Shown here: one piece after another, positions 595 through 54,476 of the stretch
Layout of the letters: the number at the start of each line of letters is the position of its first letter
Numbering within the stretch: the stretch's first letter is position 1
Origin: Euprymna scolopes
Lineage: Eukaryota
DNA: 63,870 bases
Strand: one strand, 5' to 3'
NCBI GenBank assembly: GCA_053919585.1
Contig: CM132820.1
The notes under the pieces: generated by a model
What the model was told of the DNA's origin: nothing
What the model saw: only the letters and a program-made list of their open reading frames with translations
Database searches by the model: none
Made by a program: the position numbers and the translations under genes

Positions 595-1650
595 AACAGA
601 TGCTAGCCATCTCAGTGCTCATCACCACTCTCATCAATGTTGCTGGGTGAATCGTCAGTGACATCCAAACCACGTTCATTAGCCCGAAGGTGACTTTTCA
701 GGCCAACATTTGAGTTGCACAGTCTGACACGTATGTGGCAGACAAGGTTGAGTGTTGAAATTTGTTTCACTTTTGCCCCCGCTTTTCTGTTCCCTCTGCC
801 CACAACATGTGTTAGGTTGGCGCAAAAATAATGTCGGTTTGATATATACTTGTCATAAAACGACATTATTTTTGCACCAACCTAATATTTCTTTTTGTGG
901 TTAATATAAGCAGATTTCGAGAGGAGCATCCGATCACAAGTTTCACATTTCGAACTGTTCAACGCATTAGGAAAAACCAACACATTACATTTCCCAATGT
1001 TTCTCTTGAGTTCAGCATGATCGATTCTTTCCATTTCAAAAACTTCAGTTCTACCTTTCACTAGCCTTCTCTATTTAGGTCGTCATTTCGCTAGAGTTTC
1101 CCCAGTTCTGAACAGGGATTGTGAAGGTTTTAAGATCGTCTTTTATGCAATCCTTGAAGTATCTCTTTCGACCATGCTGAGGACGTTTCCCAGTCCTAAG
1201 CATTGCCGTAAAACAAGTGCTTGGGTAGCCTCACATCCTCCATCCGACCAACATGATCTGCCCAGCGCAACCGGTTCTCCATTACTATCGCTTGAATACT
1301 CAAACAGCTTTCTTGAAAATGTCCGTGTTAGGAGTCAGCGACTGCCATTTTACATTCAAAATTTGCCTGAGGCATTTCTGATGGAATTTCTCAGGTTGCT
1401 TTAAGTGCTGATGCTGTGTTTTCCAGCACTCTAACGAGTAAAGTAAAACAGAAAATACACAGGTCGAGCAATCACTGATTATGATTTTGACAGAGATCCC
1501 ACGATCACACTGCAATCACTTTTCTAGTGTTCCAAATGCTATGCTTGCTTTCTGAATGCGATGATATATCTTCGTATCCAGGGAGCAATCTCTGGAGACT
1601 GTGTCACCTAAGTGCACAAATGTGTCTACAATATTTAGTCTTACACCCCC
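595..1650 (-). mobile_element. Decayed RTE-clade (BovB-like) LINE, 3' part
   Basis: Minus-strand peptides VLLYSLECW...EKFHQKCLRQILNVKWQ and C-terminal CRVRLCNSNVGLKSHLRA resemble RTE RT/C-terminus; frameshifted and interrupted by a MITE. Confidence 0.75.
812..885. mobile_element. 74-bp mariner-derived MITE (MADE1-like architecture)
   Basis: TTAGGTTGGCGCAAAAATAATGTCG...CGACATTATTTTTGCACCAACCTAA terminal inverted repeats; second copy at 54477-54553. Confidence 0.85.
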
Positions 1651-5519: not shown

Positions 5520-5825
5520 AGAAGTTCACTCGAGGATAAAGGTTAATGAATGTAAGATGGTAGTGTAGTAATAAATAATGATATAAATTGGGTAGAATTT
5601 GAATATTACTTGCGAAGGCTCAAGAAGAACTTGTTTACATTGGACTTGAAAGCTAACATATTATATTCAATTGGAAAGCAGACCAGCGGAACAGTGTTAC
5701 ACGGGCGGGAAGTTCTGTGAAAGAAAGTTTGTTCATGGAATCTGCCTTTGGATTTAGGTACAGATAGAGAGTGGGGGGAAATCATGTATAGTGGTTGTAA
5801 CTAGTCGAGTGTTTTTGTGAAAGTT
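5520..5825 (-). mobile_element. CR1 (Zenon-like) LINE 3' fragment, family 1
   Basis: Similar to 34159-34500 (GAGGATAA tail; FNLQxFKSNVNKFL-like end). Confidence 0.7.
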
Positions 5826-6407
5826 TTGTTCTTTTTTCATTTTTTTAGTCCATCTTCTTCTTCTTCTTCTTCTTCTTCTTCTTCTTCTCCGTACGGTGCG
5901 ATGGATTTTTCATAATTTACATCCATAGCAAGAAGGACAACAGAAAGACAGGGTCATTTTCTACAATTGACTGGTTGAACACGGGTGTCCATGTGTGTGT
6001 CATTAGAATCCTGTCACTAGCGAGTACCACTAAGCTAAATCTTTCATATCTCAAATTCGTGATCTCAGTTAAGATTGACTCCGAAGTCTGCCGCCGCCAA
6101 CCTTTTCATCATGATTCTTCATTGTATAGTCCCATCACCGATCTGCTGTAACAGCCAATATACCGAAATATGTTTACTCTCGACTAGAAACCCTATAAAG
6201 CCCCTTTTCCTCAGCTTATTTCTACCGGAAACTAGAAACTTTATTCCGAATTCTCTAACTGAAACTCTCTCCGGCTAACTGCTTATGGCGTCACTTAATC
6301 TATGTAACACAATGGATCCGTTGCTGTCATATTGTCATTTATTTCCTAGTTAATCCTTGCCTGGTTGTAGAGTACGGTATAACATGCGTAGAGCTATTTT
6401 GATCTTT

Positions 6408-7978: not shown

Positions 7979-8326
7979 ATTTAATAATTATTATAGTAAA
8001 TAATTATGTCAGCCTCTTTAAGAACCTCGTTTCTTATCGTTGAGCACTTTCAGTTGAATTAAAAAGTCGGTCAATTTAGCTCTTATGCACAGATCATCAT
8101 ATAATGATTAGATCACTCTAACTGACATTAAAAACCTTAAAAAATAAATAGTTAAAATTCAACAGCATTTCTCGCAGTTAAGCGAAGCCGAATGGATATG
8201 GCCCTTGCTAATGAAGTCAGAGATGGCTTTTGTCACCGGGTTCGAATCTATCGATTGGTGTTAATCATGACACCCTGCACTGAAGATTCCCAAAAGGATG
8301 AAAGACTAGTGTCTGTAGGTATTTGA

Positions 8327-8332
<6 letters not shown>
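7979..8332 (+). ncRNA. tRNA-headed hammerhead element, family A monomer (SINE-retrozyme-like)
   Basis: A box AAGCCGAATGG (8185), B box GGGTTCGAATC (8238); HHR 8274-8319 CCTGCA-CTGAAGA-TTCC CAAAA GGAT-GAAA-GACTAGTG-TC-TGTAGG; homologous to 20441-20960 and 48975-49133. Confidence 0.85.
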
Positions 8333-8394
<62 letters not shown>

Positions 8395-8395: not shown

Positions 8396-8701
8396 TAGCA
8401 ATAGGTGTCCGGCGTTGCCCGGGTGTTTGGAGGTGTATGCTGAGCAAAAAAAAAGGTAAATTTTTTTAATTTGACCCCTATAACATTTATTGTTGGGGGC
8501 TCAACTCGAGTTATTAAGTTAGATCCATGTCCAAGGAACCTATATCTAAAATTTCAAGTGTTCAGACCCAAAATTGTCGGAGGAGTTCGGTAGAGTTCTT
8601 AAAGGTCAAATCGTTGAACTTTGACACCTTAATCGCCAAATTTCTGGCCGAAAACCGAATTAAAATGAGTTATTGCGTATGGAAATGTACACACACACAC
8701 G

Positions 8702-9929: not shown

Positions 9930-11665
9930 TGAATTACACATCAGTGTATATCAGAATGAGGTTATATAAGTAAAAATAAATATTAGATAAAATCATGCCA
10001 ACATTAAAAATAAGAATAAACAACATAACCTTTAGATTTCCTCTGAAGAAGTTATTAGCTAGTTAAGTAGAATAGCACAAGGAAGGAACAGAAAATTTAT
10101 GTTTGACATAGATTCATATTACCAATCTATTTCCTCTAGCTTATTTGAAAACTAGCAATAAAGGAAACAAACATAACTGGATTAGAAGTCGATATAGTAT
10201 AGAATTCTGATTATATATAAAATAGGATATGTACTCGAAAAAATAGAAATCTTAACTTTGATATCACGATGGGTTTTGGACTCTGCTCATGTAATTGATC
10301 TGGTGGGACTATACATATTGAGGAAACTAAATAATAAAATTACAGACCTAAATGAGGATTTATAAAGAGATGATGCACTTTTTTTCGCGAATTTTAGTAA
10401 TAGAGTATTAGAAAAAACGAAACAAAAAATTAAGCAATTTTTAGTGAATTAAACCTAAAAATAGCAATAGATATAAACCACAAATAGTAAACTTCAAAAA
10501 TATAACACTAAACCTTGAAAATAATTCATACAAACTTTACCATGAACCAAACCAAACTCTATACTATATAGACTATAAATCAAATTATCCAAAAGCCATG
10601 AAAAATCCATTATTCATAGCATTTCAAAACAGAATTTCTAAATCATCGCAAAGCAAGCAAGTCTTTAATAGAAATAAAGACTACTATAACCACGTATTAG
10701 TAAGATCCGGATACAACAGACAAATTAGTTATTTGTGGGACGTTCAAAATAGAAATGAACATGGGGAAAATTAGTGTAATATCATATAATATGGCTACGG
10801 ATGGAACTAGTAAATGAAAAAGTAATAGAAAAATAAAATGAGAAAAATAACTACAAAAAGCAATAATGAAAGAGGGGCATTTAACTCAATAGAGAAAATA
10901 AGAAGGAAAAAAGACGAAGGAACCAAATCTGGTTTTATCCGCCGTACAGTGACCAAATTAAAAATAACATTTCGAAAGAATTCTACCAAATTATTGATAA
11001 ACATTAGCCCCAGAATGTAAACTAAGCAAAATAATTAATAAAAGTATAATTAAACTTTCCTTCTCCACTTCATCCTACTTAACCAAAACAGTTATAAATT
11101 CCAACAATGAAAAAAATTAACAAAATCCAGAAAGATAGGGATAAGGAAACCCAGGAACAATATAGTAAAAATAGCTTCGATTGTTGAAACCCAGATAAAT
11201 GTTGACTTGAAGGGAAATGCCTAACTTCAGATATTGTCTATAAATGTGAGGTCATAACTGAAAACAAAAATACGATATACTTGAGATCGACAGATGCCAA
11301 TTCAAAGACTCCGTAACCACCTAACATCCTTCAATTGAAACATAAATAATAAAGCAAACACCAGTAACAATAAGAATGAGAATAATAATGATAATAGGAA
11401 TAACGGAATGAATAATAGAATCAGGAAAAGTAAGAAGATAAACAACACAGCACCCGGTGAATGAATTAGGGAACTCCGTATAAATAAAACTTAATATAAA
11501 GCAGGGACGGCTAGTAAGTATAAACCAAATAAATCGAAAGGATATATATTTGAATCATATCACATATTAACATCTAAGGAAGATTTATTAAATAAGCGAC
11601 TGGATGTAGTGCAAGATTGCCAGCATAAGAATAAATTCGTGCTATTCCGCATTAAACCAGACTAA
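9930..11665 (+). pseudogene. Decayed Penelope-like element (RT + GIY-YIG), related to 38780-40280
   Basis: Remnant motifs DSAHVIDLVGLYIL, RDDAL, WFYPPYS, LEGKCLTSDIVYKC, NHLTSF, LLNKR...CQHKNKF; many frameshifts. Confidence 0.8.
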
Positions 11666-14446: not shown

Positions 14447-14785
14447 TTTTATAATAAGAATACAAAAGCCAGAATGAAATAGCAGCCAAACAGTACATAA
14501 CCTAACCGTTAATACTTGTAAATGAAGTAGCTATTAGAAAATAATGCAATGATAATTTTTTTAAAATGAAACACCGCCAAATAAATGCCAGTCCACCTCT
14601 TTAATATCTTCCCCATCCCATCCGTGAAGCCTTGATCCTAAGAATCCCTACTGCAAATTCTGCAATTTGGCTTTTGTAACTTATATTTTCGAATTCTGAA
14701 AGACATTTTACATGTAAATCGTCTTATCCATTCTAAGCCTTATGAAAAACCCCATTAAATTTGCTAAGTGCGAAACGAGAATGAA

Positions 14786-17700
14786 ATAAGAGCAAAATAG
14801 CACCTCACCTAACTGTTAGAAATAAGAGCCAAATAGCATCTCACTTAACTGTTAGAAATAAGATCCAAATAGCACCTCACCTAACTGTTAGAAATAAGAG
14901 CCAAATAGCACCTCACCTAACTGTTAGAAATAAGAGCCAAATAGCACCTCACCTAACTGTTAGAAATAAGAGCCAAATAGCACCTCACCTAACTGTTAGA
15001 AATAAGAGCCAAATAGCACCTCACCTAACTGTTAGAAATAAGAGCCAAATAGCACCTCACCTAACTGTTAGAAATAAGAGCCAAATAGCACCTCACCTAA
15101 CTGTTAGAAATAAGAGCCAAATAGCACCTCACCTAACTGTTAGAAATAAGAGCCAAATAGCACCTCACCTAACTGTTAGAAATAAGAGCCAAATATCACC
15201 CCACCTAACTGTTAGAAATAAGAGCCAAATAGCATCTCACCTAACTGTTAGAAATAAGAGCCAAATAGCACCTCACCTAACTGTTAGAAATAAGAGCCAA
15301 ATAGCACCTCACCTGTTAGAAATAAGAGCCAAATAGCACCCCACCTTACTGTTAGAAATAAGAGGCAAATAGCACCCCACCTAACTGTTAGAAATAAGAG
15401 TCAAATAGCACCTCACCTAACTGTTAGAAATAAGAGCCAAATAGCACCCCACCTAACTGTTAGAAATAAGAGCCAAATAGCACCCCACCTAACTGTTAGA
15501 AATAAGAGCCAAATAGCACCTCACCTAACTGTTAGAAATAAGAGCCAAATAGCACCCCACCTAACTGTTAGAAATAAGAGCCAAATAGCACCCCACCTAA
15601 CTGTTAGAAATAAGAGCCAAATAGCACCTCACCTAACTGTTAGAAATAAGAGTCAAATAGCACCTCACCTAACTGTTAGAAATAAGAGCCAAATAGCACC
15701 CCACCTAACTGTTAGAAATAAGAGCCAAATAGCACCCCACCTAACTGTTAGAAATAAGAGCCAAATAGCACCTCACCTAACTGTTAGAAATAAGAGCCAA
15801 ATAGCACCTCACCTAACTGTTAGAAATAAGAGCCAAATATCACCCCACCTAACTGTTAGAAATAAGAGCCAAATAGCATCTCACCTAACTGTTAGAAATA
15901 AGAGCCAAATAGCACCTCACCTAACTGTTAGAAATAAGAGTCAAATAGCACCTCACCTAACTGTTAGAAATAAGAGTCAAATAGCACCTCACCTAACTGT
16001 TAGAAATAAGAGCCAAATAGCACCTCACCTAACTGTTAGAAATAAGAGTCAAATAGCACCTCACCTAACTGTTAGAAATAAGAGCCAAATAGCACCTCAC
16101 CTAACTGTTAGAAATAAGAGTCAAATAGCACCCCACCTAACTGTTAGAAATAAGAGTCAAATAGCACCTCACCTAACTGTTAGAAATAAGAGCCAAATAG
16201 CACCTCACCTAACTGTTAGAAATAAGAGTCAAATAGCACCTCACCTAACTGTTAGAAATAAGAGTCAAATAGCACCTCACCTAACTGTTAGAAATAAGAG
16301 CCAAATAGCACCTCACCTAACTGTTAGAAATAAGAGTCAAATAGCACCTCACCTAACTGTTAGAAATAAGAGCCAAATAGCACCTCACCTAACTGTTAGA
16401 AATAAGAGTCAAATAGCACCCCACCTAACTGTTAGAAATAAGAGTCAAATAGCACCTCACCTAACTGTTAGAAATAAGAGCCAAATAGCACCTCACCTAA
16501 CTGTAAGAAATAAGAGTCAAATAGCACCTCACCTAACTGTTAGAAATAAGAGCCAAATAGCACCTCACCTAACTGTTAGAAATAAGAGCCAAATATCACC
16601 CCACCTAACTGTTAGAAATAAGAGCCAAATATCACCTCACCTAACTGTTAGAAATAAGAGCCAAATAGCACCTCACCTAACTGTTAGAAATAAGAGCCAA
16701 ATATCACCCCACCTAACTGTTAGAAATAAGAGCCAAATATCACCTCACCTAACTGTTAGAAATAAGAGCCAAATATCACCCCACCTAACTGTTAGAAATA
16801 AGAGCCAAATAGCACCTCACCTAACTGTTAGAAATAAGAGTCAAATAGCACCTCACCTAACTGTTAGAAATAAGAGCCAAATAGCACCTCACCTAACTGT
16901 TAGAAATAAGAGCCAAATAGCACCTCACCTAACTGTTAGAAATAAGAGCCAAATAGCACCTCACCTAACTGTTAGAAATAAGAGCCAAATAGCACCCCAC
17001 CTAACTGTTAGAAATAAGAGCCAAATATCACCCCACCTAACTGTTAGAAATAAGAGCCAAATAGCATCTCACCTAACTGTTAGAAATAAGAGCCAAATAG
17101 CACCTCACCTAACTGTTAGAAATAAGAGCCAAATAGCATCTCACCTAACTGTTAGAAATAAGAGCCAAATAGCACCTCACCTAACTGTTAGAAATAAGAG
17201 CCAAATAGCACCTCACCTAACTGTTAGAAATAAGAGCCAAATAGCACCTCATCTAACTGTTAGAAATAAGAGTCAAATAGCACCTCACCTAACTGTTAGA
17301 AATAAGAGCCAAATAGCACCTCACCTAACTGTTAGAAATAAGAGCCAAATAGCACCTCACCTAACTGTTAGAAATAAGAGCCAAATATCACCCCACCTAA
17401 CTGTTAGAAATAAGAGCCAAATAGCATCTCACCTAACTGTTAGAAATAAGAGCCAAATAGCACCTCACCTAACTGTTAGAAATAAGAGCCAAATAGCACC
17501 TCACCTGTTAGAAATAAGAGCCAAATAGCACCCCACCTAACTGTTAGAAATAAGAGCCAAATAGAATCTCACCTGTTAGAAATAAGAGCCAAATAGCACC
17601 CTACCTAACTGTTAGAAATAAGAGCAAAATAGCACCTCACCTAACTGTTAGAAATAAGAGCCAAATAGCACCTCACCTAACTGTTAGAAATAAGAGCCAA

Positions 17701-18040
17701 ATAGCACCTCACCTAACTGTTAGAAATAAGAGCCAAATAGCACCCCACCTAACTGTTAGAAATAAGAGCCAAATAGCACCCCACCTAACTGTTAGAAATA
17801 AGAGTCAAATAGCACCTCACCTAACCGTTAGAAATAAGAGCCAAATAGAATCTCACCTTACCGTTAGAAATAAGAGCCAAATAGAATCTCACCTTACCGT
17901 TAGAAATAAGAGCCAAATAGAATCTCACCTTACCGTTAGAAATAAGAGCCAAAATAGAATCTCACCTTACCGTTAGAAATAAGAGCCAAATAGTATCTAA
18001 CCTTACAGTTAGAAATAAGAGCCAAATAGTATCTAACCTA
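14786..18040. repeat. 36-bp tandem satellite/minisatellite, ~90 copies (GAAATAAGAGCCAAATAGCACCTCACCTAACTGTTA)
   Basis: Head-to-tail units with no spacers; diverged edge units; a single diverged relative at ~14476-14512. Confidence 0.97.
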
Positions 18041-18419
18041 GCTGTGGTCACTGACAGACACTGGGCATGGAAGCAGAACTCTGCGCCGGCCCACAAGTCT
18101 AAAGAGACCTAGGCTTGGCTTCAGAAGGAGTGCTGCGACTTTGTACTTTTCTCTCACTACCTCTCTTCTCTGCCAATCTGAACCTGTTGGGTTACTTCGA
18201 TTGGTCATCTGTCGAGAACATCACTAACATGACCTCCCACAACACCAAAGCCAGCCTGATTATCGCATCCATCGAGTATTCACCGAGCTCCCGTGTAAAA
18301 AGCATGCTCCCAGTTCTAGTAAAACAAAGAGATGTTAGAACATAATGTAAAAATAAATTTTTAAATTAAAAAAACAAAAAAACAAACAAAAAACTACTAC
18401 ACCACCGAATGAATATAAG

Positions 18420-19021: not shown

Positions 19022-19400
19022 ATTTTTTTACAAGGAGGTCACCACCTATCAAGGCCCAGAAGCCACTCAGGGATAAGGGTTATTGCATGTACAGTACGTT
19101 GTACGTTAGTGTTGAGATTTCATATAGCGTCTACTTAAGGGGGCGGCCTATCAGGAACTTGTTTACGTTGGACTTGAAGACATCCAAGTTGTAGTCAGGT
19201 GGGAAACAGGCAGACGGAACAGAGTTCCACTGGCGTACTGTTCTAAGAAAGAAGCTGTGTTCATGGAATCTACGTTTTGATTTAGGCACAGGTAGAGAGT
19301 GGGGAAGACTTTTGACAGTGGCTTCAGCTAGACGGGTGTTTTTCGTAAAAGATTGGCGAGGGGGGGATCAGACAAGCACTTGCCATGGAAATAACATCCA
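19022..19400 (-). mobile_element. CR1 (Zenon-like) LINE 3' fragment, family 1
   Basis: Poly-A tail, conserved 3' UTR, SFFLRTVRQWNSVPSACFPPDYNLDVFKSNVNKFL. Confidence 0.85.
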
Positions 19401-20440
19401 AGAATAAAATTCTATTTCAGCAAACGACTGAGAGGTATGAGATCATTTTTTATTAAATCGTTATTTCAATCATCACTCGTAACGTCAAAACTAAGGGCAG
19501 GGTACCCCCAACGCGCACCACAGATTTACCCCCCATATGTAACACGGGATAACTGTAATTCAATGTAATATTATCATCTTAACCTTTTTCTTATTTAAAA
19601 GAAGGAGCTTCAAATAAACTGCTCATATTTTTTTACAATTTTTTTATAGCATACGAACATAATGAAAATGCGAGACTAAAATCGTGTTTACATTATACAC
19701 GTTTTAAAACAACGCTCCTATGTAGTGTACGTACTGTCTATTGGCTTTTTGTCCCACATAGTAGCAAGTGGTGTGAGGTACGCGCGTGCGCACGCATGCC
19801 GAAAAGGCACGCTGTCGGTCCGTAGATCGTCCAGCTAGGAGGCTGGTCTGAAAAAGGAGAAACCGCTTATTGCTCTTTCTTTTATAGGTGTTTCCGGTGG
19901 TCTTTTGCGCATGCGTGGATTTCCTTTGAAAGGGGAAGTGACGTTGTCCATGCGTGCGTGTATGTGAGTACATGTGTGTACGTTAGCGTGTGTTTGTGTA
20001 CACGTGAATGTGAGTGTATGTACGCGAACGTGAATATATGTACGTGTGTGGACGTGGGCGCGTATGTTTGTGTGCGCGTATGTATATGACAAGTAATATA
20101 GCTTGAAATGTGAACGCGTGTTTTTGTGTGGGACTAGAAAAGGCTCGCGCAGTAGTTACTTTTTTGAAGCTGTAAACGTACCCATGTTTTAAAATTTTAG
20201 CAAAAATCAAATAATAGTCATACTTTCCTGAAATTTTCGATATTTATTCATTTTCAAAATAACTTACATAATAAACGTCGGTCTCGTTAAACATGAGAGG
20301 AAATATTCTCAGGTGTTCTAACCCCCTATATTTATGTTACGAAAACTACAAAAATAAATAGAAATTTCAACATTTTTTAAAGCTAAAAAGATCAAATAAT
20401 TAAAAAAATAGTTACTTCTGGATATATATATATATATCCA

Positions 20441-20958
20441 GAATTTTTAAACATTTTTAATTTAAATGTTCATTACGTCAGGCAGACAGTGATCAAATCG
20501 TTATACGATGATCTACGCATAAGAGCTAAATTGACAGACTTTTTAATTCAACAGAAAGTGCTCAACGATAAGAAACGAATTTCTTAAAGGGGCTGTCATA
20601 ATTATTTTTTTACTATAATAATTAAATACCTACAGACACTAGTGTTTCATCCTTTCGGGATTCTTCAGTGCAGGGTGTCACGATTACTACCAGTCGAACG
20701 ATTCGAACCCCGCGACACGAGACATCTCTGGCTCGATTAGCGGAGACCGTATCCATTCGGCTACTATTAACCGTGTGAAATAGCGTTGAATTTTTAAACA
20801 TTTTAATTTAAATGTTCATTACGTCAGACAGACAGTGATCAAATCGTTATACGATGATCTACGCATAAGAGCTAAATTGACCGACTTTTTAATTCAACAG
20901 AAAGTGCTCAACGATAAGAAACGAATTTCTTAAAGGGGCTGTCATAATTATTTTTTTT

Positions 20959-20960
<2 letters not shown>
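20441..20960 (-). ncRNA. Family A tRNA-HHR element as a 1.5-mer partial tandem (period 347 bp), intact hammerhead
   Basis: Direct repeat 20441-20612 / 20788-20960; A box TAGCCGAATGG (20763-20753), B box GGGTTCGAATC (20710-20700); HHR 20674-20629 CCTGCA-CTGAAGA-ATCC CGAAA GGAT-GAAA-CACTAGTG-TC-TGTAGG. Confidence 0.9.
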
Positions 20961-29282: not shown

Positions 29283-30832
29283 CATAGTAGTATAAATCGT
29301 AACTAGATTAAATCGTGATTTTCTTATTAAGGAAGTGGTATTTTCCATTGGAGAACTATGTATTTAACAGCTGTTCTGTTTTTAAATCCCCGAAACAGCT
29401 ACATGGTAAATTTAACACTGACTCATGAGCAACGCAGAGTATCTTTTATGGTATAAGAATAGTATAAAATAAAATCTTTCTCACAGGTCACGCAGCATGT
29501 GAAAACACCTGCTCTACGTAGAATTGATTTGTCTAGAAACTTGAGCCTATTAATTTATACCACCTACCAAATGTAATACTATAATCTTACTATTTCGACA
29601 CATGCTGTAGGCTATTAAGCACTTTAGATCAACTTTAACTGTTAGATATTGGTCGGACAATGCCGAGTAACCTGGTCGATTATTATCATTCGAAAAATCA
29701 AACAATTTTGGAAAATGCGTATTTACAGTTTGTATTATTTATTCTGGAATTTAACTCCGAAATAAAATAAACAAAGTCGATTTAGGAATTTAAACGTAAA
29801 TAAGATTTTAGCTTAGGTCAACGACACAAGATTTTGTCTTCTTTGCTGAAGTAATAGTTAGCAGAGATTAAACTACGGAATTGGCGAGAAATGCGTTAGC
29901 GAACAGACGTGTGTACGATCATGTTGGAAGCAAAAAGATTAACGAGTCAATATGTAGAAAGAGACTCAGCGTGACAAACTCCGACAAGGGAATCAATAAG
30001 ACGAATGAAACCTATGTAAAATATAACTCGTTGTTATGGCGTTCTTTTAGGGGGTTGACAAATAAGAAGGTATGTGTTGCTTCGGTCTGAGACAAGCGGA
30101 CATATTGTTATCGTTTGGTTGCAAGAAAGCTGTCGTTAAAAGTTTATGTGCCACGTGTTCTTATGAAGAAGCGGATGCATACACAATGAACATTTTACAT
30201 GCATACCACAATAGAAGAACATTTTAACCACCAGACGACACACTATATATATGGAAACGTTAAAGAGACGCTGTTTATATATGTCACTCCGCTACATGAC
30301 AATAACACATAATAAATCTAATACCTCATACGGAATCTGCTCCACAGACACCTGATCCACACATACAATGAATTATATAGTCACGTATCTAACACGTGAC
30401 CACGTTCTTGCATTGAGCATTTGTTACGCATAAAATATTACAAATTTCCACACAGTTTAAACTCAGTAGACAAAAAAAAAAAGAAAGAAAAAAAACAACA
30501 ACAAAACAACAACTTAAAAATGCCTGATAGTGATTGGGAGAATTCAGTTGTAATTAATCGCAAAAACAGTTGAACGAGAAAACACATACATATCCTGCAT
30601 TTAACAAAAAACAAGAATAATCACCAGAAGAGAGAACTTAAAGCACTCCGTNNNNNNNNNNNNNNNNNNNNNNNNNNNNNNNNNNNNNNNNNNNNNNNNN
30701 NNNNNNNNNNNNNNNNNNNNNNNNNNNNNNNNNNNNNNNNNNNNNNNNNNNNNNNNNNNNNNNNNNNNNNNNNNNNNNNNNNNNNNNNNNNNNNNNNNNN
30801 NNNNNNNNNTTTGGGGTAAACAGTTACATATC

Positions 30833-30882
30833 GTCGCTACAAATAGTCATCTGTTTCAGTCAAAGAGACTTCATCAGGCGAC
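30833..30882 (-). ncRNA. Type I hammerhead ribozyme with intact core
   Basis: GTCGC-CTGATGA-AGTC TCTTT GACT-GAAA-CA GATGACTATT TG-TA-GCGAC; stems I and II perfectly paired. Confidence 0.85.
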
Positions 30883-31574
30883 CTGGAACCTCTCGACGCC
30901 CCCCCCCATGAAAAAATGGGATAGATTAGAGAGAAATTAAGGAGAATGGAGCCCTTCAAAAAAAAGTATAAAAAGTTCATAAAGAGTTTATAATAAATTG
31001 CGAGCTGTCTAAAAAAAGAGGATAGAAAAAAGGGGATAGAAAAAAAGAAAAAGGAAAGATCGCATTAGGACGTACTAAAAGATATTCAAAACTTTTCACA
31101 ACAGAATGTAAATTTGAAATAAAATTAAAAATGGGTTATGATTTTATTGGGGCTGTGAGTTGTACAGGAGGGTGGTGTGGAAGGGGTTCTACTTATATTG
31201 AACGTGTCACGGAAAGAAAAGGACTTTGCATTTGTGTGATTTTACTCCGAGAGTTACGTGTCGTTATGCGTTAAGTTGGGGGTGAAGGGATTGTCTGCAT
31301 TAGACAATACTATCATAATAGGAATAAATACTTGTAAAAGGAAAAAAAGGGATGATGCCCCAGGCATGGTTGACCTCGAGGCCTACCCTTGGGGGAGATA
31401 CTTTTTTTTGACGTCCACACCCTGGCAGGGTTTTTTCAAAAGGCCGAAAATGTCTGTTCGTTTTAAAACTGCGCGCGCAGGAAATTTTCTAAATCAAAGG
31501 CCTGAAAAAGAAACCATGGCATTCAGCGCCTCAACCAATGAGGTTCGCCTTTCCATGTACAATTTCCAACAGTA

Positions 31575-33949: not shown

Positions 33950-35290
33950 TTATGATTATGAAAGCATAAAACACTGGTGTTTGCAGATAGAGAAATAATT
34001 ATTTATAATTATTAGCCACTTTATTAAAGAAAGTTCTTAAAGTTAAGCACTGCCTAAAAAGTAAAGGCGATCGCCTGGCCTTGTGCGAGGTTTTGTGATC
34101 ACTATTGACTGTTTTAACGTTGCGCCTTAATATGTCATTTGTAAACTTTTAATTTCCCTTTTTTTTACATAGGCATCACCACTTATCAAGGCCAAGAGGC
34201 CACTCAAGGATAAGGGTTAAAGAGTGTACAGTAGACATTGGACAATATAGTAATCATTAGTAATGAAAATTTGGTAAATTTGATAACTTATATAGAACGG
34301 CTCATCAAGAACTTATTTACGTTAGACTTGAACACAACCATATTGTAGTCAGCCGGAAAGCAGGAAAACGGAAGACAATTCCACAGGCGTGCAGTTCTAA
34401 GAAAGAAGCTTTGTTCGTGGAATCTACGTTTAGGTTTAGGCACATATAAAGAGTGGGGGGAATTATTGATAGTGTGTACAGCTAGACGAGTGTTTCTTGT
34501 GAAAGTTTGGCGAGGGGGGACCATAGATTGAAGCTCAGTTGAACACCTTCCATGAAAATAACGATACATCAGAGACAAACTCGCAACATCTCTTCTGTGA
34601 GATAGAGGTTGCAAGGAAGAGAAAAGGATATCTCCTACGAGGCTACGAAGTCTATTTTGAACTCTATCAAGGCAGGACAAGTCCTTTCTAGCAGGTCCTG
34701 CCCAGATGTGGCAACAATATTCCATCCTTGGACGTACCTGGCTCTTATATAGATAGAGAATAGTATCAGCAGTGAGATATTTACCGGATCGATAGAAAGA
34801 TCCCACCATTTTTCCAGCGGCCTTGGCAACAGATTTGATGTACGTGTTCCATTTAAGATCAGGAGTAAAGGTCAAGCCCAGAAGCTTGTCAAAACTTGAG
34901 GCCTCCTGAAGACGAGAGCCATTCATTTCAATTGATGCCAGATGTGGATCAGAATGTTGATGATGTAAAGAGAGAAGCTTGGTTTTAGATGCATTAAAAG
35001 TAACCAGTCACTCCTTTCCCCATTGTACTACGTGCTCAAGATCAGAGGAGAGAGAATTGGAGAGAACTTGGTCGTTTACTGTCTTAGATGTGCTACCATA
35101 GATGGTAGTGTCGTCAGCATAAATGTCTACAAATTCTCATTGTAGGTGATAATGTTCAAGAAAGAAGTATCGTTGAGTGAAAGTTGAGCTTGGTTTTGAA
35201 TCTCGACCCGTAGCAATCGTCCCTTCCTGCATTGATGATTGCGAAAGAATGAAACACTAGCGTCTGTATGCCAATATATTTGCGGAGGAT
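33950..35290 (+). ncRNA. Old family A tRNA-HHR unit (HHR-body-tRNA-HHR) split by a CR1 insertion
   Basis: Degenerate HHR ~33950-33988 and body to ~34158; after the LINE, a degenerate B box GGTTTTGAATC and HHR 35226-35270 CCTGCA-TTGATGA..GAAA-CACTAGCG-TC-TGTATG. Confidence 0.6.
34159..35135 (-). mobile_element. 5'-truncated CR1 (Zenon-like) LINE, RT C-terminal part (ORF 34288-34926)
   Basis: IYADDTT, LLGLTF, YKSQVRPRMEYCCHIWAG, LQPLSHRRDVASL; 3' UTR and poly-A. Confidence 0.9.
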
Positions 35291-35667: not shown

Positions 35668-36045
35668 TTTTTCTTTTTAGAAAAGAGTCACCACTTATCA
35701 AAACTCGAGGCCACTCGAGGATAAGTGTTAATGAGTGTACAGTATTCAATGTGAAAATGTAAAAATTGTTAGTAGTGGAAATTTGGTAAATTGGATTACT
35801 TAAGGGGACGGCTCATCAAGAATTTGTTTACGTTGGACTTGAAGACAACCATATTGTAGTCAGTTAGAAAGCAGGGAAACGGAAGAGAGTTCCACAGGCG
35901 TGCAGTTCTAAGAAAGAAGATTTGTTCATGGAAGTTCATGGTTAGGCGCAAATAAAAAGTGGGGGAAATTATTGATAGTGGTTGCAGGTAGACGAGTATT
36001 TTTCGTGAACGTCAGGCCAGGGGGGGGGGAGATGGGACGGGACCA
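35668..36045 (-). mobile_element. CR1 (Zenon-like) LINE 3' fragment, family 1
   Basis: Similar to 34159-34530. Confidence 0.85.
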
Positions 36046-36362: not shown

Positions 36363-37694
36363 TATCTATGTAACTATAAAAGTGAATGTGTCTGTGTATC
36401 TGTACGTCTGTCTGTGTGCGTAAATTTCCCTACACAATAACTCTGTCAATTTTAAGTCTACAGACTCAAAATTTGATATACAGGGTAGTGAGATTTGGGA
36501 AAATCTATGTGATCGGTTTTCGGCCAGAAATTTGGCTGTTAAGGGGATCTTTGAGTTCTCTACCAAACTCCTCCGACAATTTTGGGTCTGAACACTTGAA
36601 ATTTTAGATATAGGTTCCTTGGACATGGATCTAACTTAATAACTTGATTTGAGCCTAAAATAATAAATGTTAAGAGGTCATAATAGGGGTCAAAGTTTTA
36701 AACAATTACCGCTTTTCTTTTTGTCAAGATACACCTCCAAACACCCGGGCAACGCCGGGATGAAATGCTAGTATATCTATAAAAGTGTGTGTGTGTGTGT
36801 GTGTCTGTGTCTGTGTATCTGTATACATTTCCCTACACAATAACTCTGTCAATTTTCAGTCTACAGACTCGAAATTTGATATACAAAGTACTGAGATCTG
36901 CGAAAAATCTTTGTAATCCGTTTTCGGACAAAAATTTGGCGATTAATGAGTCAAAGTTCAACGAATTAACCTTTGAGAACTCTACCAAACTCCTTCGCCA
37001 ATGTTGGGTATAAACACTTGAAATTTGGGATATATGTTTCTTGGACATGGATCTAACTTAATAACTTGATTTGAGCCCAAAACAATAAATGTTAAAGGGT
37101 AATAATAGGGGTCAAACTTAAAAAAAAAAAAAAAATTGACCGTTTCGGTCTTTACCAAATTGCTAAGACAATTTCTGGTTTGAACATTTGAAATTTTACA
37201 TAAAGGGTATTCAGAGATAGGGCAAGCTTTTTAATCGGTTTGGATCGAACATTAGAGTTACCAATATATAAATGTATGTATGCATGTATGTATGTATGTA
37301 TGTATGTTTGCATGTCTGCCTAAAACTTTCGATAGAGGCGACGGATTTTTACTAAATCAGTATCGTTTTGAAGTTCGACCTTTCAGACAACAAATATCAA
37401 AAAATTGGCTAAAAACATTGATATCTTCACCTTCAACTGGGCACTTTTCTACAGGGGGGGGTCATACTTTCCTTTCGATTGTCTAGCTTTAATTAAAACC
37501 TACGTCACTTCCGGTTTAGCGGTGGTCATAACAGCAAAAAACGTCACGTTTTTCCCCGTTCTTCTCCTCCTTTGCAGTACGAGTTCGAGCTTACCTTCCT
37601 ACTACCATTTTTTGTTTTGCTCAACACACACCTCCAAACACCCAGGCAACGCATGGTTGAAATGCTAGTATATCTATAAAAGTGAAAATATCTT

Positions 37695-38494: not shown

Positions 38495-38720
38495 TTCGAC
38501 CGTTCAGAAAGCCGTTGAGGTTCGAGAAAGGTTTGAACTGAAACGAACACAGTTCAAGCGTAACGGTCACATTTCAGTAAACATGGTTAATTCATTACTC
38601 ACTCAGCATCAGCCGTATAGGGTAATGGTGAGAACCTTGACAGTCATTTGGGCGGTCGGCTTTTGCCTATCTAGCCGCGCTGATGAGCTGCGAAACAGTA
38701 CTGTATGTGGATACCCATAT
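38495..38720 (+). ncRNA. Family B hammerhead unit fused upstream of the PLE ORF
   Basis: HHR 38675-38710 CCGCG-CTGATGA-GCTGC-GAAA-CAGTACTG-TA-TGTGG; tRNA A-box-like TAGGGTAATGG at 38618; nested hairpins 38500-38568. Confidence 0.75.
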
Positions 38721-38780
38721 ATATTTTATAACTTAGAATATTGGACCAGGAAAAATACCCCTAACCACTTCAACATTTTA

Positions 38781-40280
38781 ATGGGATCGACGGACTCGAC
38801 TCAGGTCACTGATCTAGTTGGCCTTTTCCTTTTAAATGAAATACATTGTATACTCCATAAACAATTCAAACTTGAAGGAGGGCTATATAGAGATGATGCA
38901 CTTTTCATAACGAATTCTACTAATAAAAATTATGAAAATGCAATTAAAGCTCTACATACATTATTTAAAAATTATGGACTTAGTATAAAAATCGACCCTA
39001 ATAAAAAAATTGTTAATTTCTTAGACATAACCTTAAATCTTGAAAATTCTACCTTTGAACCATACCATAAACCTAACCAATCACTTCTATATGTCCACAA
39101 TCAATCAAACCACCCTAAATCAATATTAAAATCAATAGTTCCCAATATCGCTCTAAGAATTTCTAGACTGTCTTCTACTAAATCAATATTTACCAAAAAT
39201 GAAAAATACTATAATGAAGCCCTTAAAAACTCTGGATATAATTCACAAATTAAATTCATAAATGAAAATGATAGAAACATAAACTGCATTAAAAATAAAC
39301 CTATTAAGAGCGTAATAACATATAATATGGCAATGTCTTCCCGTATACGAGTTAAGAAAAATAACCAGGAGACAAAAAAAGATAAAACCAAACTACAAAT
39401 ATTAGATAATAATATAAATAAACAACAAACTAAAACCCGCAAACGTAAGAATAGACACAAGGAGATCCTATGGTTCAACCCCCCGTATTCCAAAAACCTA
39501 GAAACAAACATAGCTAGAGAATTTTTTAAAATATTAGATAAGAACTTTAAAGCCCCCCATAGATATAATAAGATTTTCAATAAGAACACAATTAAAGTCT
39601 CTTACTCTACTATGCCTAACCTTCATCAGAAAATAATTAGCTCTAATAATAATAAAATTAATAAACTACAAAATGCAACTATACAAAATACATCGGACTG
39701 TAACTGTAGAAGAAAAAATAAATGTCCCCTACAAGGCTCATGTAAAATTAAAAATGTTATCTATAGCTGCACAGTATCAAAAACTCCAAATATACAAGAA
39801 CCTATCAACAGCCATAACTCAACTACAGAATTAAATAATAACACCAACTTAAATCAATCTACCGATCAATTATTAACCAACCCACCACATTATAATCCAA
39901 CAATAGACCTAACGGAAAATAATCATAATAATCAAGAGGTAATATATATTGGTTCCACATCTGGCCCAATAAAACATAGAATTTCAACGCACAAACATTC
40001 TTTTAAAAATAACTCTCTATCAAACCAAACTACTCTATCCAACTATATTTGGCAACTAAAAAATAGCAATATTTCTTTCAACTTAAAATGGCAAATAATT
40101 GAGACTTGCAAATCATATAAACCAGGAGATAAATTTTGTACATTATGTACAAAAGAAACCGTAAAAATTTTAAAATATGAAGATATAAAAAGCACAACCA
40201 AACTAGTAAATTCAAGACACGAGCTTCTATCGTGTAATCATAAACGTTGGTTTAAATTTAATAAATATAAACCACCTTAA
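38781..40280 (+). CDS. 5'-truncated Penelope-like RT + GIY-YIG endonuclease, frame still open
   Basis: MGSTDSTQVTDLVGL, GLYRDDAL, VNFLDITL, WFNPPYS, CNCRRKNKCPLQGSC linker, VIYSC...YIGST, RISTH, CTLC, LVNSRHE..CNH. The first ~66 aa of ORF 38583 are non-coding read-through. Confidence 0.9.
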   Translation: MGSTDSTQVTDLVGLFLLNEIHCILHKQFKLEGGLYRDDALFITNSTNKNYENAIKALHTLFKNYGLSIKIDPNKKIVNFLDITLNLENSTFEPYHKPNQSLLYVHNQSNHPKSILKSIVPNIALRISRLSSTKSIFTKNEKYYNEALKNSGYNSQIKFINENDRNINCIKNKPIKSVITYNMAMSSRIRVKKNNQETKKDKTKLQILDNNINKQQTKTRKRKNRHKEILWFNPPYSKNLETNIAREFFKILDKNFKAPHRYNKIFNKNTIKVSYSTMPNLHQKIISSNNNKINKLQNATIQNTSDCNCRRKNKCPLQGSCKIKNVIYSCTVSKTPNIQEPINSHNSTTELNNNTNLNQSTDQLLTNPPHYNPTIDLTENNHNNQEVIYIGSTSGPIKHRISTHKHSFKNNSLSNQTTLSNYIWQLKNSNISFNLKWQIIETCKSYKPGDKFCTLCTKETVKILKYEDIKSTTKLVNSRHELLSCNHKRWFKFNKYKPP

Positions 40281-46457: not shown

Positions 46458-46694
46458 TTTTTTTTTTACAAAATAGTCACCACTTATCAAGACCCGAAGG
46501 CCACTCAAGGTTATGGGCTTATGAATGTAAAGTGATAGTTTAGTATTCGTTAATTGTGTAAATTGGGAGAAGCTATGTGTTGTGGTACCAGTTTAAGGGG
46601 ACAACTCAACAAAAATATGTTTACATTGTACTTAAAGATTACCATATTCTAATCGGCTGGGAAGCAGGCAAATAGAATTGTGTTCCATATGAAA
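46458..46694 (-). mobile_element. CR1 LINE 3' fragment, family 1 (cut by gap)
   Basis: CACCACTTATCAAGACCCGAAGGCCACTC tail. Confidence 0.75.
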
Positions 46695-47795: not shown

Positions 47796-48974
47796 ATAAA
47801 CATCATATATATAAGGATAATAGTACGCCATATATATAACAAAAGACCATTATTTACTGAAGTGAAAGGAAAACCCGGGGGAACTTTACCCAAAAATAAA
47901 TCTATATTTTTTGTGTGTATTGATAGTCTTATCAACACCCCTTTTTTCTATTTATTTAAAAAGAAAATACAACTTTGTTATTTCTGAGTCGTGGAATTGC
48001 ATTCATCTACAAAAGATCTAGCTAATGTGCATATTTTTTTATTGTTTTTAATTAATTTCCTATTAGTTTTTTTTCGGTTCTCTTCTACGATGATCATCTT
48101 TATTTAACTATTACGTGTAATTATATTCATACAGATATTTTATGATTATATTTGCATAATATTTGCGTAGAAATGAAGAAAATCAAATTTACTGTGTGTT
48201 TATCGTGTTGCCATAACAACGTGACGTAGCCAAGGACGGTAGTGGACGTGAGTATGTGTGCGTGTATGCGCGTGTTTTCGTGCTGTGTTTATATTATGCA
48301 TGTTGTTTCGTATCTTCTCAACTTTTTCAAATCTATGTGTACAGTAATACAAACTCGTTTTTCGAGCTGAATAAATATGTTACATTGAATAAAAACACGA
48401 AAAATATATCCAGTTTGGTAGAAAAGTAACTTATCTTGCCTTTAATAACATTTATTTGTTATATATTTGTTTTTTGACAACTTTTTCGAATCTATGTGTA
48501 CAGTAATACAAACCCGAAATGAAAAGACCACGAGTGAACGCGCGTTTTATATAAAAATAAGAATTTTTAAATTTTATCTTTCTAGCTTTAAAAAAAAGTT
48601 TTTAAAATTTTATCAGCCGGCATAATTTATTTTTAAATATTGAAAAATTTCAGGAAAATTAATTTTTGCTAGATTTTCAAAACATTGTTTTCGTGTTGTG
48701 TGTACGTATCTGCGGCTAGCACCAGAATGGCGGCCGTGATGTCGTAGGTTAGATTGTTAGATTGTGTAAGTTTCGTATTTTTTTAATTTGTAAATAACAA
48801 GTTATGAAAAAATTAAACCCTTCCAAGATGGACAATAAATAAAGCCATAATATTTTATGGTAAAGGTAAGAGCGTAGGAACCATAGTTTTTTAGGAGATG
48901 TGATTATTGGATTAACCAATCAGAAATCGTCTGTGGCACGCACATCTCTGTTTATATATATATATATATATATA

Positions 48975-49133
48975 TAATTATTTTCTGTAATGATTATTAT
49001 ATACCTACTGACACTAGTGTTTCATCCTTTTGGGAATCATCAATGCAGGGTGTCATGATTAATACCAGTCGATATATTCGAACCCGGCAACGAAGCCATC
49101 TCTGACTCCATTAGCAAGGACCAAATCGGCCAC
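48975..49133 (-). ncRNA. Family A tRNA-HHR element (5' side lost in gap)
   Basis: B box GGGTTCGAATA; HHR 49049-49004 CCTGCA-TTGATGA-TTCC CAAAA GGAT-GAAA-CACTAGTG-TC-AGTAGG. Confidence 0.8.
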
Positions 49134-54305: not shown

Positions 54306-54476
54306 AGGTGTTTTTTTATACATACAAACAGCATACCTTTTGTCATTGTGTTATCTCTTCTTCTAATAAACGCTGGACAAAATTGATAATTTCATAATAT
54401 TTTAAGCTTGTATAATTCTTTCGGAGTTGCAATGTTACGCAATGTTGCAATGTCTAGCTCTTTACGCCTCCTACAA

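What the first reader, a model, noticed from the sequence alone, without database searches (positions are those of the whole stretch)
20441..20960. Candidate SINE-retrozyme: 347-nt tandem unit combining a tRNA-Ser-derived Pol III promoter with an intact hammerhead ribozyme
Seen: on the minus strand a tRNA-like head (A box TAGCCGAATGG, GCTAAT like the Ser-GCU anticodon loop, long variable-arm hairpin, B box GGGTTCGAATC) lies ~25 nt upstream of a canonical type I HHR with a palindromic stem III (CACTAGTG) and a GUC cleavage site. The flanking 170-bp body is repeated at a 347-bp period. Homologues sit at 7979-8332, 48975-49133 and 33950-35290. Known: metazoan retrozymes are tandem HHR units giving circular RNAs; palindromic stem III is typical of dimer-cleaving PLE HHRs; Schistosoma SM-alpha is a precedent for a tRNA-type promoter plus HHR. 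Inference: Pol III read-through, HHR-to-HHR excision and rolling reverse transcription regenerate units that carry their own promoter. This family looks undescribed, but I cannot confirm that without a search.
Basis: partly seen in the sequence, partly recalled or inferred. Interest (0 to 1): 0.92.

Follow-up and report, generated by a model that had tools for sequence, protein, structure and literature searches.

The report
tRNA-headed hammerhead ribozyme retroelement
This is a short non-coding mobile element that carries a tRNA-like promoter motif just upstream of a self-cleaving hammerhead ribozyme; the design is already known from blood-fluke Sm-alpha elements, so it is a new example of a known kind.

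Summary
On the minus strand, 20441-20960 reads body, tRNA-like head (A box 20763-20753, B box 20710-20700), type I hammerhead (20674-20629, cut 20635/20634), then body again. That is 1.5 units of a 347-nt period holding only one ribozyme. Three more copies lie at 7979-8334, 48974-49133 and 33950-35290.

The hammerhead in copy A has an intact core and three helices. It scores 25.6 bits against Rfam, below the gathering score of 34. Helix III is a 10-nt palindrome that pairs between units in a two-unit fold. The other three copies carry disabling changes.

The head keeps only the A and B boxes. The tRNA covariance model finds nothing, so a tRNA-Ser origin is unproven.

Six of seven copy ends abut (TA)n. 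Every measurable copy is slightly longer than one unit and starts with body, not head. These are insertion signatures of Penelope-like elements (PLEs), not of LINE-driven SINEs.

The architecture matches schistosome Sm-alpha. Best reading: a PLE-dependent, Sm-alpha-like retrozyme-class element. It is a new member of a known kind. Transcription, cleavage, circles and genome-wide copy number are untested.

The parts
20788..20960 (-). Copy A, upstream partial unit (body 1). It begins directly after an (AT)n tract.
   Evidence: 98.2% identical over 171 nt to 20441-20611 at a 346-347-nt offset; sequence.
20686..20770 (-). Copy A, tRNA-like head. It is an 85-nt degenerate class-II-shaped cloverleaf holding the A box 20763-20753 and the B box 20710-20700, whose starts are 54 nt apart.
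   Evidence: ARAGORN calls it only at the 80% threshold, as Asp(atc); the same call arises in 5 of 400 shuffles. The Rfam tRNA model gives no hit at E<=10. The A and B boxes are invariant between copies A and B while the rest of the head has 14 mismatches, p=7e-4.
20629..20674 (-). Copy A, type I hammerhead ribozyme. Predicted cleavage is after C17, between 20635 and 20634. Helix III lies within the 10-nt palindrome ACACUAGUGU.
   Evidence: Rfam RF00163 25.6 bits, E=8e-4, all pairs canonical. Sole strict-descriptor hit, with 0 hits in 300 shuffles. The double-hammerhead helix III forms in a cofold and in the MFE of a two-unit transcript.
20441..20628 (-). Copy A, post-ribozyme linker plus body 2. 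It ends at a short (TA)7 tract.
   Evidence: No run of four or more T on the sense strand anywhere in 20441-20960.
20402..20408 (-). T7 run, the first Pol III terminator-like signal downstream of copy A. It is flanking DNA, not part of the unit.
   Evidence: Read from the sequence.
7979..8334 (+). Copy B, 1.05 units. It starts 9 nt after the cut-site position and runs body, head (A box 8185-8195, B box 8238-8248), hammerhead 8274-8319, plus about 15 nt, then (TA)n. The hammerhead has a U.U mismatch at 10.1/11.1 and G at 15.2.
48974..49133 (-). Copy C. Its 5' part is hidden by the masked N run 49134-49267. It keeps the B box 49085-49076 and a hammerhead at 49049-49004 with C3U, a U.U mismatch at 10.1/11.1 and an A.A mismatch at 1.1/2.1. 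It ends in (TA)n.
33950..35290 (+). Copy D, an older copy at about 77% identity. It runs hammerhead remnant (33950-33995), body (to about 34110), an inserted minus-strand LINE fragment (about 34110-35125, ORF 34288-34926), a B-box remnant, and a decayed hammerhead at 35226-35270. It has (TA)n-like DNA at both ends.
38583..40280 (+). Context only. This is a Penelope-like element ORF with YRDD reverse transcriptase, a Cys/His linker and a GIY-YIG endonuclease. It represents the class of element proposed to mobilise the unit, but it is not shown to be the partner.
   Evidence: Translation. Hits at about 35% identity to proteins carrying PF26215. No nucleotide similarity to the unit.

Best explanation
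The 347-nt unit is a non-autonomous retroelement of the hammerhead-bearing, Penelope-dependent class (metazoan non-LTR retrozymes). It carries a tRNA-derived internal Pol III promoter, so it shares the architecture of schistosome Sm-alpha.

Proposed cycle:
1. Pol III starts about 10 nt upstream of the A box in one unit of a source array. It reads through following units, because the sense strand has no T4 terminator.
2. Hammerheads of neighbouring units pair through their 10-nt palindromes into a double hammerhead and cut after GUC. The resulting monomer begins with linker and body and ends with head and ribozyme.
3. A PLE reverse transcriptase/GIY-YIG endonuclease nicks AT-rich or (TA)n DNA. 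It starts cDNA synthesis a few tens of nt downstream of a ribozyme on RNA that is uncut there.
4. The insertions are therefore slightly longer than one unit.

Shown:
- the anatomy of the unit;
- the intact ribozyme in copy A;
- its dimer-type helix III;
- conserved A/B boxes and hammerhead;
- association with (TA)n;
- copies longer than one unit, none beginning at the head.

Inferred:
- Pol III transcription;
- cleavage;
- circle formation;
- the PLE partner.

The four copies in this window look like dead or crippled insertions, not source loci.
For: Ribozyme:
- Full core and three helices in copy A.
- It is the only strict-descriptor hit, with 0 hits in 300 shuffled windows.
- The active monomer fold (-6.3 kcal/mol) loses to an inactive fold (-8.0).
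- In a two-unit transcript the unconstrained MFE pairs the two palindromes.

Promoter:
- The A and B boxes have starts 54 nt apart.
- They are invariant between copies A and B, while the rest of the head has 14 mismatches, p=7e-4.
- The sense strand of all 520 nt has no run of four or more T but has 8 runs of four or more A. The window background is 3.8 T4+ runs per 347 nt. Shuffling gives P(no T4+)=0.076.

Conservation:
- Hammerhead 89-93% identical between copies, against 78-84% for head and body.
- Fisher p=0.037 for A versus B.

Mobilisation:
- Four dispersed copies.
- Six of seven visible ends lie within 5 bp of a (TA)>=5 tract, while only 3% of the window lies within 12 bp of one.
- Terminal redundancy is about 16, 42 and 170 nt in B, D and A.
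- 3' ends fall 12-45 nt after the cut site in B, C and D.
- PLEs insert as partial tandems, prefer (TA)n or AT-rich DNA, and start reverse transcription internally downstream of the hammerhead (PMC8557442, PMC11167929).
- PLE coding fragments lie in the window at 10039-11307 and 38556-40277.

Sm-alpha has the same order, promoter then hammerhead, with the promoter at the 3' end of the cleaved monomer (PMC6765202).
Against: - Only one of the four hammerheads is intact. B, C and D have a U.U mismatch at 10.1/11.1. C and D have C3U.
- Copy A itself has A-U rather than the usual G-C at 10.1/11.1, and it scores below the Rfam gathering score.
- No locus has two intact ribozymes, so release of a unit-length RNA is not demonstrable here.
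- tRNA ancestry rests on motifs only. The covariance model gives nothing, and ARAGORN calls a tRNA only at relaxed thresholds.
- The absence of T4 runs is only weakly significant.
- The two PLE fragments in the window share no nucleotide similarity with the unit. The hammerhead-like motif of the 38583 copy differs in stem II and has G at position 17.
- There are only three or four copies and no copies from elsewhere. All collection scans were empty.
- In vitro, PLE insertion did not need hammerhead cleavage (PMC11167929), so the role of the ribozyme is unclear.
Confidence: 0.6

Rival explanations
1. The unit is an ordinary LINE-mobilised tRNA-derived SINE that happens to carry a hammerhead in its body. 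The partial tandems would arise by later DNA-level duplication.
For: The head has A and B boxes like a type 2 Pol III promoter. LINE fragments are abundant in the window, at nine or more loci. A classical tRNA-like SINE with a (GAA)n tail exists at about 5880-6045.
Against: None of the three visible 5' ends starts at the head. All start in the body or in the previous hammerhead. There is no A-rich or LINE-derived tail, and no similarity to any LINE 3' end in the window. The ends sit in (TA)n, with variable terminal redundancy typical of PLEs (PMC8557442).
Confidence: 0.1
2. The copies are solo pseudo-LTR or UTR fragments of an autonomous Penelope-like element, left by 5' truncation. They would not form an independent non-autonomous family.
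For: PLE pLTRs carry dimer-type hammerheads, and PLE insertions are usually 5'-truncated partial tandems at (TA)n (PMC4209133, PMC8557442). PLE coding sequence is present in the window.
Against: Copy A continues from the ribozyme into the same 170-nt body that precedes the head. The unit therefore closes on itself at 347 nt with no room for an ORF. Copies B and D are also one unit from ribozyme to ribozyme. No copy adjoins PLE coding sequence; the nearest fragments are 1.7 and 3.3 kb away and unrelated in sequence.
Confidence: 0.12
3. The family is extinct. The A/B boxes and hammerhead are relics with no present transcription or cleavage, and the apparent conservation reflects the small sample.
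For: Three of the four ribozymes are disabled. Copies differ by about 17-23%. No two-ribozyme locus exists in the window.
Against: The two halves of copy A are 98.2% identical and its ribozyme is intact, which suggests a fairly recent insertion from a functional source. The conserved islands coincide exactly with the functional motifs.
Confidence: 0.13
4. The hammerhead and tRNA resemblances are chance matches inside an AT-rich repeat.
For: The Rfam score is below the gathering score. The tRNA model finds nothing. A relaxed ARAGORN call on copy B is matched by 12% of shuffles.
Against: The strict descriptor gave 0 hits in 300 shuffled windows. The Rfam E-value is 8e-4 with all 15 core positions and three helices. 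The motifs are the best-conserved parts of the unit.
Confidence: 0.03

Closest known systems
Sm-alpha / Sj-alpha SINE-like elements of Schistosoma (Ferbeyre 1998; Laha 2000; summarised in PMC6765202, PMC2770079, PMC8490949)
   Same: - Unit of about 335-347 bp.
- tRNA-type Pol III promoter placed just upstream of a type I hammerhead.
- The cleaved monomer carries the promoter at its 3' end.
- Found both dispersed and in tandem.
- The stem II/loop 2 sequence UCCC(R)AAAGGA resembles the Schistosoma GUCCCAAAUAGGAC in the Rfam alignment.
   Different: - The Sm-alpha head is recognisably tRNA-Gln-TTG and is called by tRNAscan-SE (PMC2770079). This head is class-II-shaped, and neither ARAGORN at default settings nor the tRNA covariance model calls it.
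- This hammerhead has A-U at 10.1/11.1 and a 10-nt palindromic helix III, and it scores below the Rfam gathering score.
- The host appears not to be a flatworm. The only named relatives of its LINE are from Hydra, and the closest unnamed hits include a Tara Oceans metagenome.
- Sequence homology to Sm-alpha could not be tested.
Metazoan non-LTR retrozymes (Cervera & de la Pena 2020, PMC7229834; Li et al. 2026 preprint 10.64898/2026.07.22.740005)
   Same: - Non-coding repeat of 150-450 bp with low GC.
- Type I hammerhead.
- Dispersed monomers and partial tandems.
- Proposed dependence on Penelope-like elements.
   Different: - Published retrozymes are described as lacking their own promoter (PMC7761336). 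This unit has conserved A and B boxes.
- No array with a ribozyme in every repeat is present in the window.
- Circular RNA is untested.
- The predicted circle is only modestly structured (z=-2.0).
Dimer-acting hammerheads of Penelope-like element pLTRs and repeat-type hammerheads such as those of Aedes (PMC4209133; PMC3088659 Fig. S8)
   Same: - Short helix III with a palindromic loop that forms a 10-bp helix only between two copies.
- Insertion at (TA)n or AT-rich DNA as partial tandems.
   Different: - Stems I and II here are full length (6 and 4 bp), not the minimal form.
- The unit carries no ORF and is not attached to one.

Membership tests
Hammerhead ribozyme, type I (Rfam RF00163) | Conserved core CUGANGA...GAAA...UH, with three helices and helix I open | tested here: met
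   Copy A at 20674-20629 has every core position, 6-bp helix I, 4-bp helix II, and A15.1-U16.1 followed by GUC. Copies B, C and D fail because of mispairs next to the core and C3U.
Hammerhead ribozyme, type I (Rfam RF00163) | Score at or above the curated gathering score (34 bits) | tested here: not met
   25.6 bits, E=8e-4 in an 801-nt scan. Not reported in whole-window scans.
Hammerhead ribozyme, type I (Rfam RF00163) | Site-specific self-cleavage | not testable with these tools
   This needs in vitro transcription of monomer and dimer constructs.
Sm-alpha-type SINE-like hammerhead element | Internal Pol III A and B boxes located upstream of the hammerhead within the same unit | tested here: met
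   A box 20763-20753 and B box 20710-20700, with the hammerhead starting 25 nt later. The boxes are invariant between copies A and B, p=7e-4.
Sm-alpha-type SINE-like hammerhead element | Head recognisably derived from a tRNA gene | tested here: inconclusive
   ARAGORN calls it only at the 80% threshold for A (5 of 400 shuffles also pass) and the 70% threshold for B (47 of 400 shuffles pass). The anticodon assignments are inconsistent. The Rfam tRNA model gives no hit.
Sm-alpha-type SINE-like hammerhead element | Sequence homology to Sm-alpha or Sj-alpha | not testable with these tools
Only the Rfam hammerhead consensus could be compared.
Sm-alpha-type SINE-like hammerhead element | Transcription by RNA polymerase III | not testable with these tools
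   Indirect only: no T4 run on the sense strand of the unit.
Metazoan non-LTR retrozyme | Non-coding repeat unit of 150-450 bp with low GC and a type I hammerhead | tested here: met
   347 nt, 38% GC, longest ORF 59 aa.
Metazoan non-LTR retrozyme | Tandem array with a hammerhead in every repeat (the definition of an active retrozyme in the 2026 preprint) | tested here: not met
   Copy A is 1.5 units with one ribozyme. B is 1.05 units. D has two decayed ribozymes. No locus has two intact ones. The genome outside the window is unknown.
Metazoan non-LTR retrozyme | Expression as unit-length linear and circular RNA | not testable with these tools
   This needs RNA data.
Classical LINE-dependent tRNA SINE | Copies begin at the tRNA-related head and end in a LINE-related or A-rich tail, flanked by target-site duplications | tested here: not met
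   All three visible 5' ends lie in the body or the previous ribozyme. The ends lie in (TA)n. There is no tail similarity to LINE fragments in the window.
Penelope-like element pLTR | Repeat contiguous with a PLE RT/GIY-YIG ORF | tested here: not met
   tblastn places PLE coding sequence only at 10039-11307 and 38556-40277, not next to any copy.

The most novel reading that the evidence does not exclude
This is a self-promoted retrozyme outside flatworms. It would be a Penelope-mobilised circular-RNA element that independently captured a class II tRNA-type Pol III promoter and purged T4 terminators, so that Pol III can run through arrays. That would show that promoter capture by hammerhead retroelements is recurrent, not a schistosome oddity. 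It would also contradict the published view that metazoan retrozymes carry no promoter.
Probability: 0.3. Interest if true: 0.65.

Novelty: new member of a known kind. Interest (0 to 1): 0.4.

Why it matters
Reviews state that animal retrozymes appear to have no promoter of their own and depend on read-through transcription (PMC7761336). Sm-alpha of schistosomes is the one described exception.

A second family with the same layout, promoter then hammerhead, would have three consequences if it sits in what looks like a marine invertebrate and shows Penelope-type insertion signatures:
- It would tie the Sm-alpha-type elements to the retrozyme/PLE world.
- It would suggest that capture of a Pol III promoter has happened more than once.
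- It would give a compact system for testing how transcription, dimer-dependent cleavage and PLE priming are coupled.

On present evidence this is an incremental addition: four decayed-to-intact copies in one window and no expression data.

Tried and rejected
- **Rfam at gathering threshold and ARAGORN on the whole window:** nothing. The hammerhead appears only in a local E-value scan. The whole-window E-value scan lost it to the filters.
- **tRNA identity:** the Rfam tRNA model is silent even in a 116-nt scan. Relaxed ARAGORN gives Asp(atc) for A and His(atg) for B, so the Ser-GCU reading was dropped.
- **External copies:** two patterns were scanned in metagenome, genome and viral contigs, an exact hammerhead 25-mer and a B-box-plus-hammerhead pattern. 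All six scans returned zero. These collections are mostly prokaryotic or viral, so this says little.
- **Protein trick:** I used the 59-aa ORF spanning head and ribozyme as a query.
  - The word-indexed search found nothing.
  - The exhaustive search found one 983-aa 'protein', P0241, translated from a 285-nt tandem array (L004). It has no hammerhead, no tRNA and no nucleotide similarity to the unit. I rejected it as a repeat-inflated chance match.
- **Organism identity:**
  - The PLE ORF has only about 35% identity to any database protein.
  - The LINE ORF is 60-86% identical to unnamed ENA assemblies, one of them a Tara Oceans metagenome.
  - It is about 50% identical to Hydra vulgaris proteins.
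  - The species is not identified.
- **Partner PLE:** the unit shares no nucleotide similarity with the PLE or LINE fragments in the window.
- **Circular fold:** the 347-nt unit folds only modestly better than shuffles (z=-2.0). This is not used as evidence.
- **Second hammerhead candidate:** a descriptor-level candidate at 30883-30828 (-) has no Rfam support and no head.
- **Ferbeyre 1998:** the paper is not held.
- **Masked N runs:** left untouched. Copy C's 5' part is therefore unknown.

Full report
**Observation**

Read on the minus strand, 20441-20960 has this layout:
- an (AT)n tract;
- a 170-nt AT-rich 'body' (20960-20788);
- a short spacer;
- a head with A box TAGCCGAATGG (20763-20753), GCTAAT, and B box GGGTTCGAATC (20710-20700);
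- a 25-nt spacer;
- a hammerhead (20674-20629);
- a 24-nt AT-rich linker;
- the same body again (20611-20441);
- a short (TA)7 tract.

The two body copies are 98.2% identical over 171 nt at an offset of 346-347 nt. The period is therefore real, but the locus holds only 1.5 units and one ribozyme. TRF does not call it.

**The hammerhead**

- Rfam Hammerhead_1 aligns over its full length with no non-canonical pair. The score is 25.6 bits, E=8e-4 in an 801-nt scan, below the gathering score of 34. The hit is lost in whole-window scans.
- By inspection it has C3-A9 as CUGAAGA, G12-A14, A15.1-U16.1, C17 at 20635, a 6-bp helix I and a 4-bp helix II. Helix II closes with A-U rather than the usual G-C.
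- A strict type I descriptor finds only this site. It found none in 300 block-shuffled windows.
- Helix III is the palindrome ACACUAGUGU.
  - As a monomer, the CAC/GUG stem would enclose an impossible 2-nt loop.
  - The best active monomer fold (-6.3 kcal/mol) loses to an inactive alternative (-8.0).
  - Two copies cofold into the double hammerhead at -29.4 kcal/mol.
  - In a two-unit transcript the unconstrained MFE pairs the two palindromes.
- This is the dimer-dependent design described for PLE and repeat-type hammerheads (PMC4209133; PMC3088659).

**The head**

- ARAGORN at default settings finds no tRNA in the window.
- The Rfam tRNA model gives no hit at E<=10 even in a 116-nt scan.
- At 80% of its thresholds, ARAGORN draws an 85-nt class-II-shaped cloverleaf for copy A (20770-20686) with anticodon atc. 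Shuffles pass this threshold 5 times in 400.
- Copy B is called only at 70%, as His(atg). Shuffles pass 47 times in 400.
- The head is therefore plausibly tRNA-derived but decayed. The Ser-GCU assignment is not supported.
- What is conserved is the promoter-like part. Between copies A and B the head has 14 mismatches in 64 positions. None falls in the 23 positions of the two boxes (p=7e-4).
- The sense strand of all 520 nt lacks any run of four or more T, although it has eight runs of four or more A. The window averages 3.8 T4+ runs per 347 nt. The chance of none under composition shuffling is 0.076.
- The first T7 run lies about 32 nt downstream of the copy, at 20408-20402.
- These points fit Pol III transcription through the unit but do not prove it.

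**Other copies**

- **B (7979-8334, +)** starts 9 nt after the cut-site position. It runs body, head and hammerhead, ends about 15 nt past the ribozyme, and is followed by (TA)n.
- **C (48974-49133, -)** is cut at its 5' side by a masked N run, which I left untouched. It ends 45 nt past the cut site in (TA)n.
- **D (33950-35290, +)** is older, at about 77% identity. It runs ribozyme remnant, body, a minus-strand LINE fragment (ORF 34288-34926), a B-box remnant and a decayed ribozyme. It has (TA)n-like DNA at both ends.
- Identity by segment: hammerhead 89-93%, spacer 76-92%, head 76-84%, body 84%, pre-head 64%. For A versus B, hammerhead against the rest gives Fisher p=0.037.
- B, C and D nevertheless carry changes expected to disable catalysis under the rules of PMC3088659:
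  - a U.U mismatch at 10.1/11.1 in all three;
  - C3U in C and D;
  - G at 15.2 in B.
- One body hairpin shows a compensatory change: ATCGT/ACGAT in A against ATCAT/ATGAT in B.

**How the copies were inserted**

- Six of the seven visible ends lie within 5 bp of a (TA)>=5 tract. Only 3% of the window lies within 12 bp of such a tract.
- Every copy with a visible 5' end starts in the body or the preceding ribozyme, never at the head.
- Each of those copies is longer than one unit. The redundancy is about 16 nt in B, 42 nt in D and 170 nt in A.
- Three of the four 3' ends lie 12-45 nt after the cut site.
- Penelope-like elements behave the same way:
  - they insert as 5'-truncated partial tandems (pLTRs);
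  - they prefer (TA)n or AT-rich DNA;
  - in the one reconstituted case, reverse transcription starts internally, some 85-92 nt downstream of the hammerhead cut site, on uncut RNA (PMC8557442; PMC11167929).
- The window contains PLE coding sequence at 10039-11307 and 38556-40277. The second carries its own hammerhead-like motif with a 10-nt palindrome at about 38675-38715.
- Neither PLE fragment resembles the unit in sequence, so the partner is not identified.
- A LINE-SINE relationship is disfavoured. No copy starts at the head, and no tail is shared with the LINE fragments in the window.

**Comparison with known systems**

- The review PMC6765202 describes schistosome Sm-alpha as a promoter followed by a hammerhead, transcribed by Pol III.
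- After cleavage the promoter sits at the 3' end of the monomer. Single copies therefore cannot propagate and tandems of at least two are needed.
- Copy B is exactly such a monomer, and the unit length (347 against 335 bp) is similar.
- Sm-alpha derives from tRNA-Gln-TTG and is recognised by tRNAscan-SE (PMC2770079). This head is neither.
- Metazoan non-LTR retrozymes are repeats of 150-450 bp with type I hammerheads, proposed to depend on PLEs (PMC7229834; preprint 10.64898/2026.07.22.740005). They are said to lack promoters (PMC7761336).
- The element therefore works like an Sm-alpha-type member of the retrozyme class.
- It fails the 'ribozyme in every tandem repeat' test in this window, and it fails the Rfam gathering score. 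I file it as a new member of a known kind, not a new kind.

**Host**

- The species is unknown.
- The window is 34% GC and rich in (TA)n.
- Its LINE ORF is 60-86% identical to unnamed ENA assembly proteins, one of them from a Tara Oceans metagenome. It is about 50% identical to Hydra vulgaris proteins.
- This points to a marine invertebrate, possibly a cnidarian, and not a flatworm.

**Limits**

- There are four copies, one intact ribozyme, no two-ribozyme locus, no copies from elsewhere and no RNA data.
- Six collection scans were empty.
- One protein-level lead (P0241, L004) was spurious.
- Pol III transcription, cleavage, circularisation and the PLE partner remain inferences.

Noticed in passing
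window 38583-40280 (+), motif at about 38675-38715: This is a Penelope-like element ORF with YRDD reverse transcriptase, a Cys/His linker and GIY-YIG. Most of the RT N-terminal half is missing. Near its start lies a hammerhead-like motif, GCCGCG-CUGAUGA-GCUGC-GAAA-CAGUACUG-UG, with a 6-bp helix I and the 10-nt palindrome ACAGUACUGU, but G at the cleavage position.
   Followed up: partly
window 10039-11307 (+): A second, more decayed PLE coding fragment detected by tblastn. It lies 1.7 kb downstream of copy B and is not contiguous with it.
   Followed up: partly
window 34288-34926 (-); fragments also near 5618-5779, 19137-19364, 35802-36024, 42454-42825, 44686-45352, 46604-46690, 54994-55595 and 56704-57075: An abundant LINE family, seen as the C-terminal part of its reverse transcriptase. 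Its closest relatives include a Tara Oceans metagenome assembly and Hydra vulgaris proteins. One fragment interrupts copy D.
   Followed up: partly
window about 5880-6045 (-): This looks like a classical tRNA-related SINE. It has an A-box-like TAGCTTAGTGG, a B-box-like GTGTTCAACC, a short body and a (GAA)n tail. It contrasts with the hammerhead element, which never starts at its head.
   Followed up: no
window 30828-30883 (-), next to N run 30652-30809: A second hammerhead candidate of different sequence. It reads GGUCGC-CUGAUGA-AGUC/UCUUU/GACU-GAAA, then a 5-bp helix III hairpin, then GUA-GCGAC. It has no Rfam hit at E<=10 and no tRNA-like head upstream, so it may be chance.
   Followed up: partly
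window 14783-18045: A 36-bp satellite with about 91 copies at 95% match.
   Followed up: no
window 810-887 and 54475-54555: Palindromic MITE-like elements that match the mir-548 model on both strands at 40-54 bits, far below the gathering score. They are probably transposon inverted repeats, not microRNA genes.
   Followed up: no
window 8396-8445 (+) and 37615-37665 (reverse complement): A shared 45-nt sequence (…GGTGTCCGGCGTTGCCCGGGTGTTTGGAGGTGT…) sits directly beside microsatellites at both places. It may be the terminus of another repeat family that targets simple repeats.
   Followed up: no
window 61240-62013 (+): An ORF with a DUF1759 domain (E=1.2e-7), of the kind found in gag proteins of BEL/Pao-type LTR retrotransposons.
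   Followed up: no
   Followed up: no
L004 10001-12952: A 285-nt tandem array of about 10 copies in an unrelated 918-kb ENA contig is annotated as a 983-aa protein. It matched the translated head region only through repeat-inflated chance similarity.
   Followed up: yes
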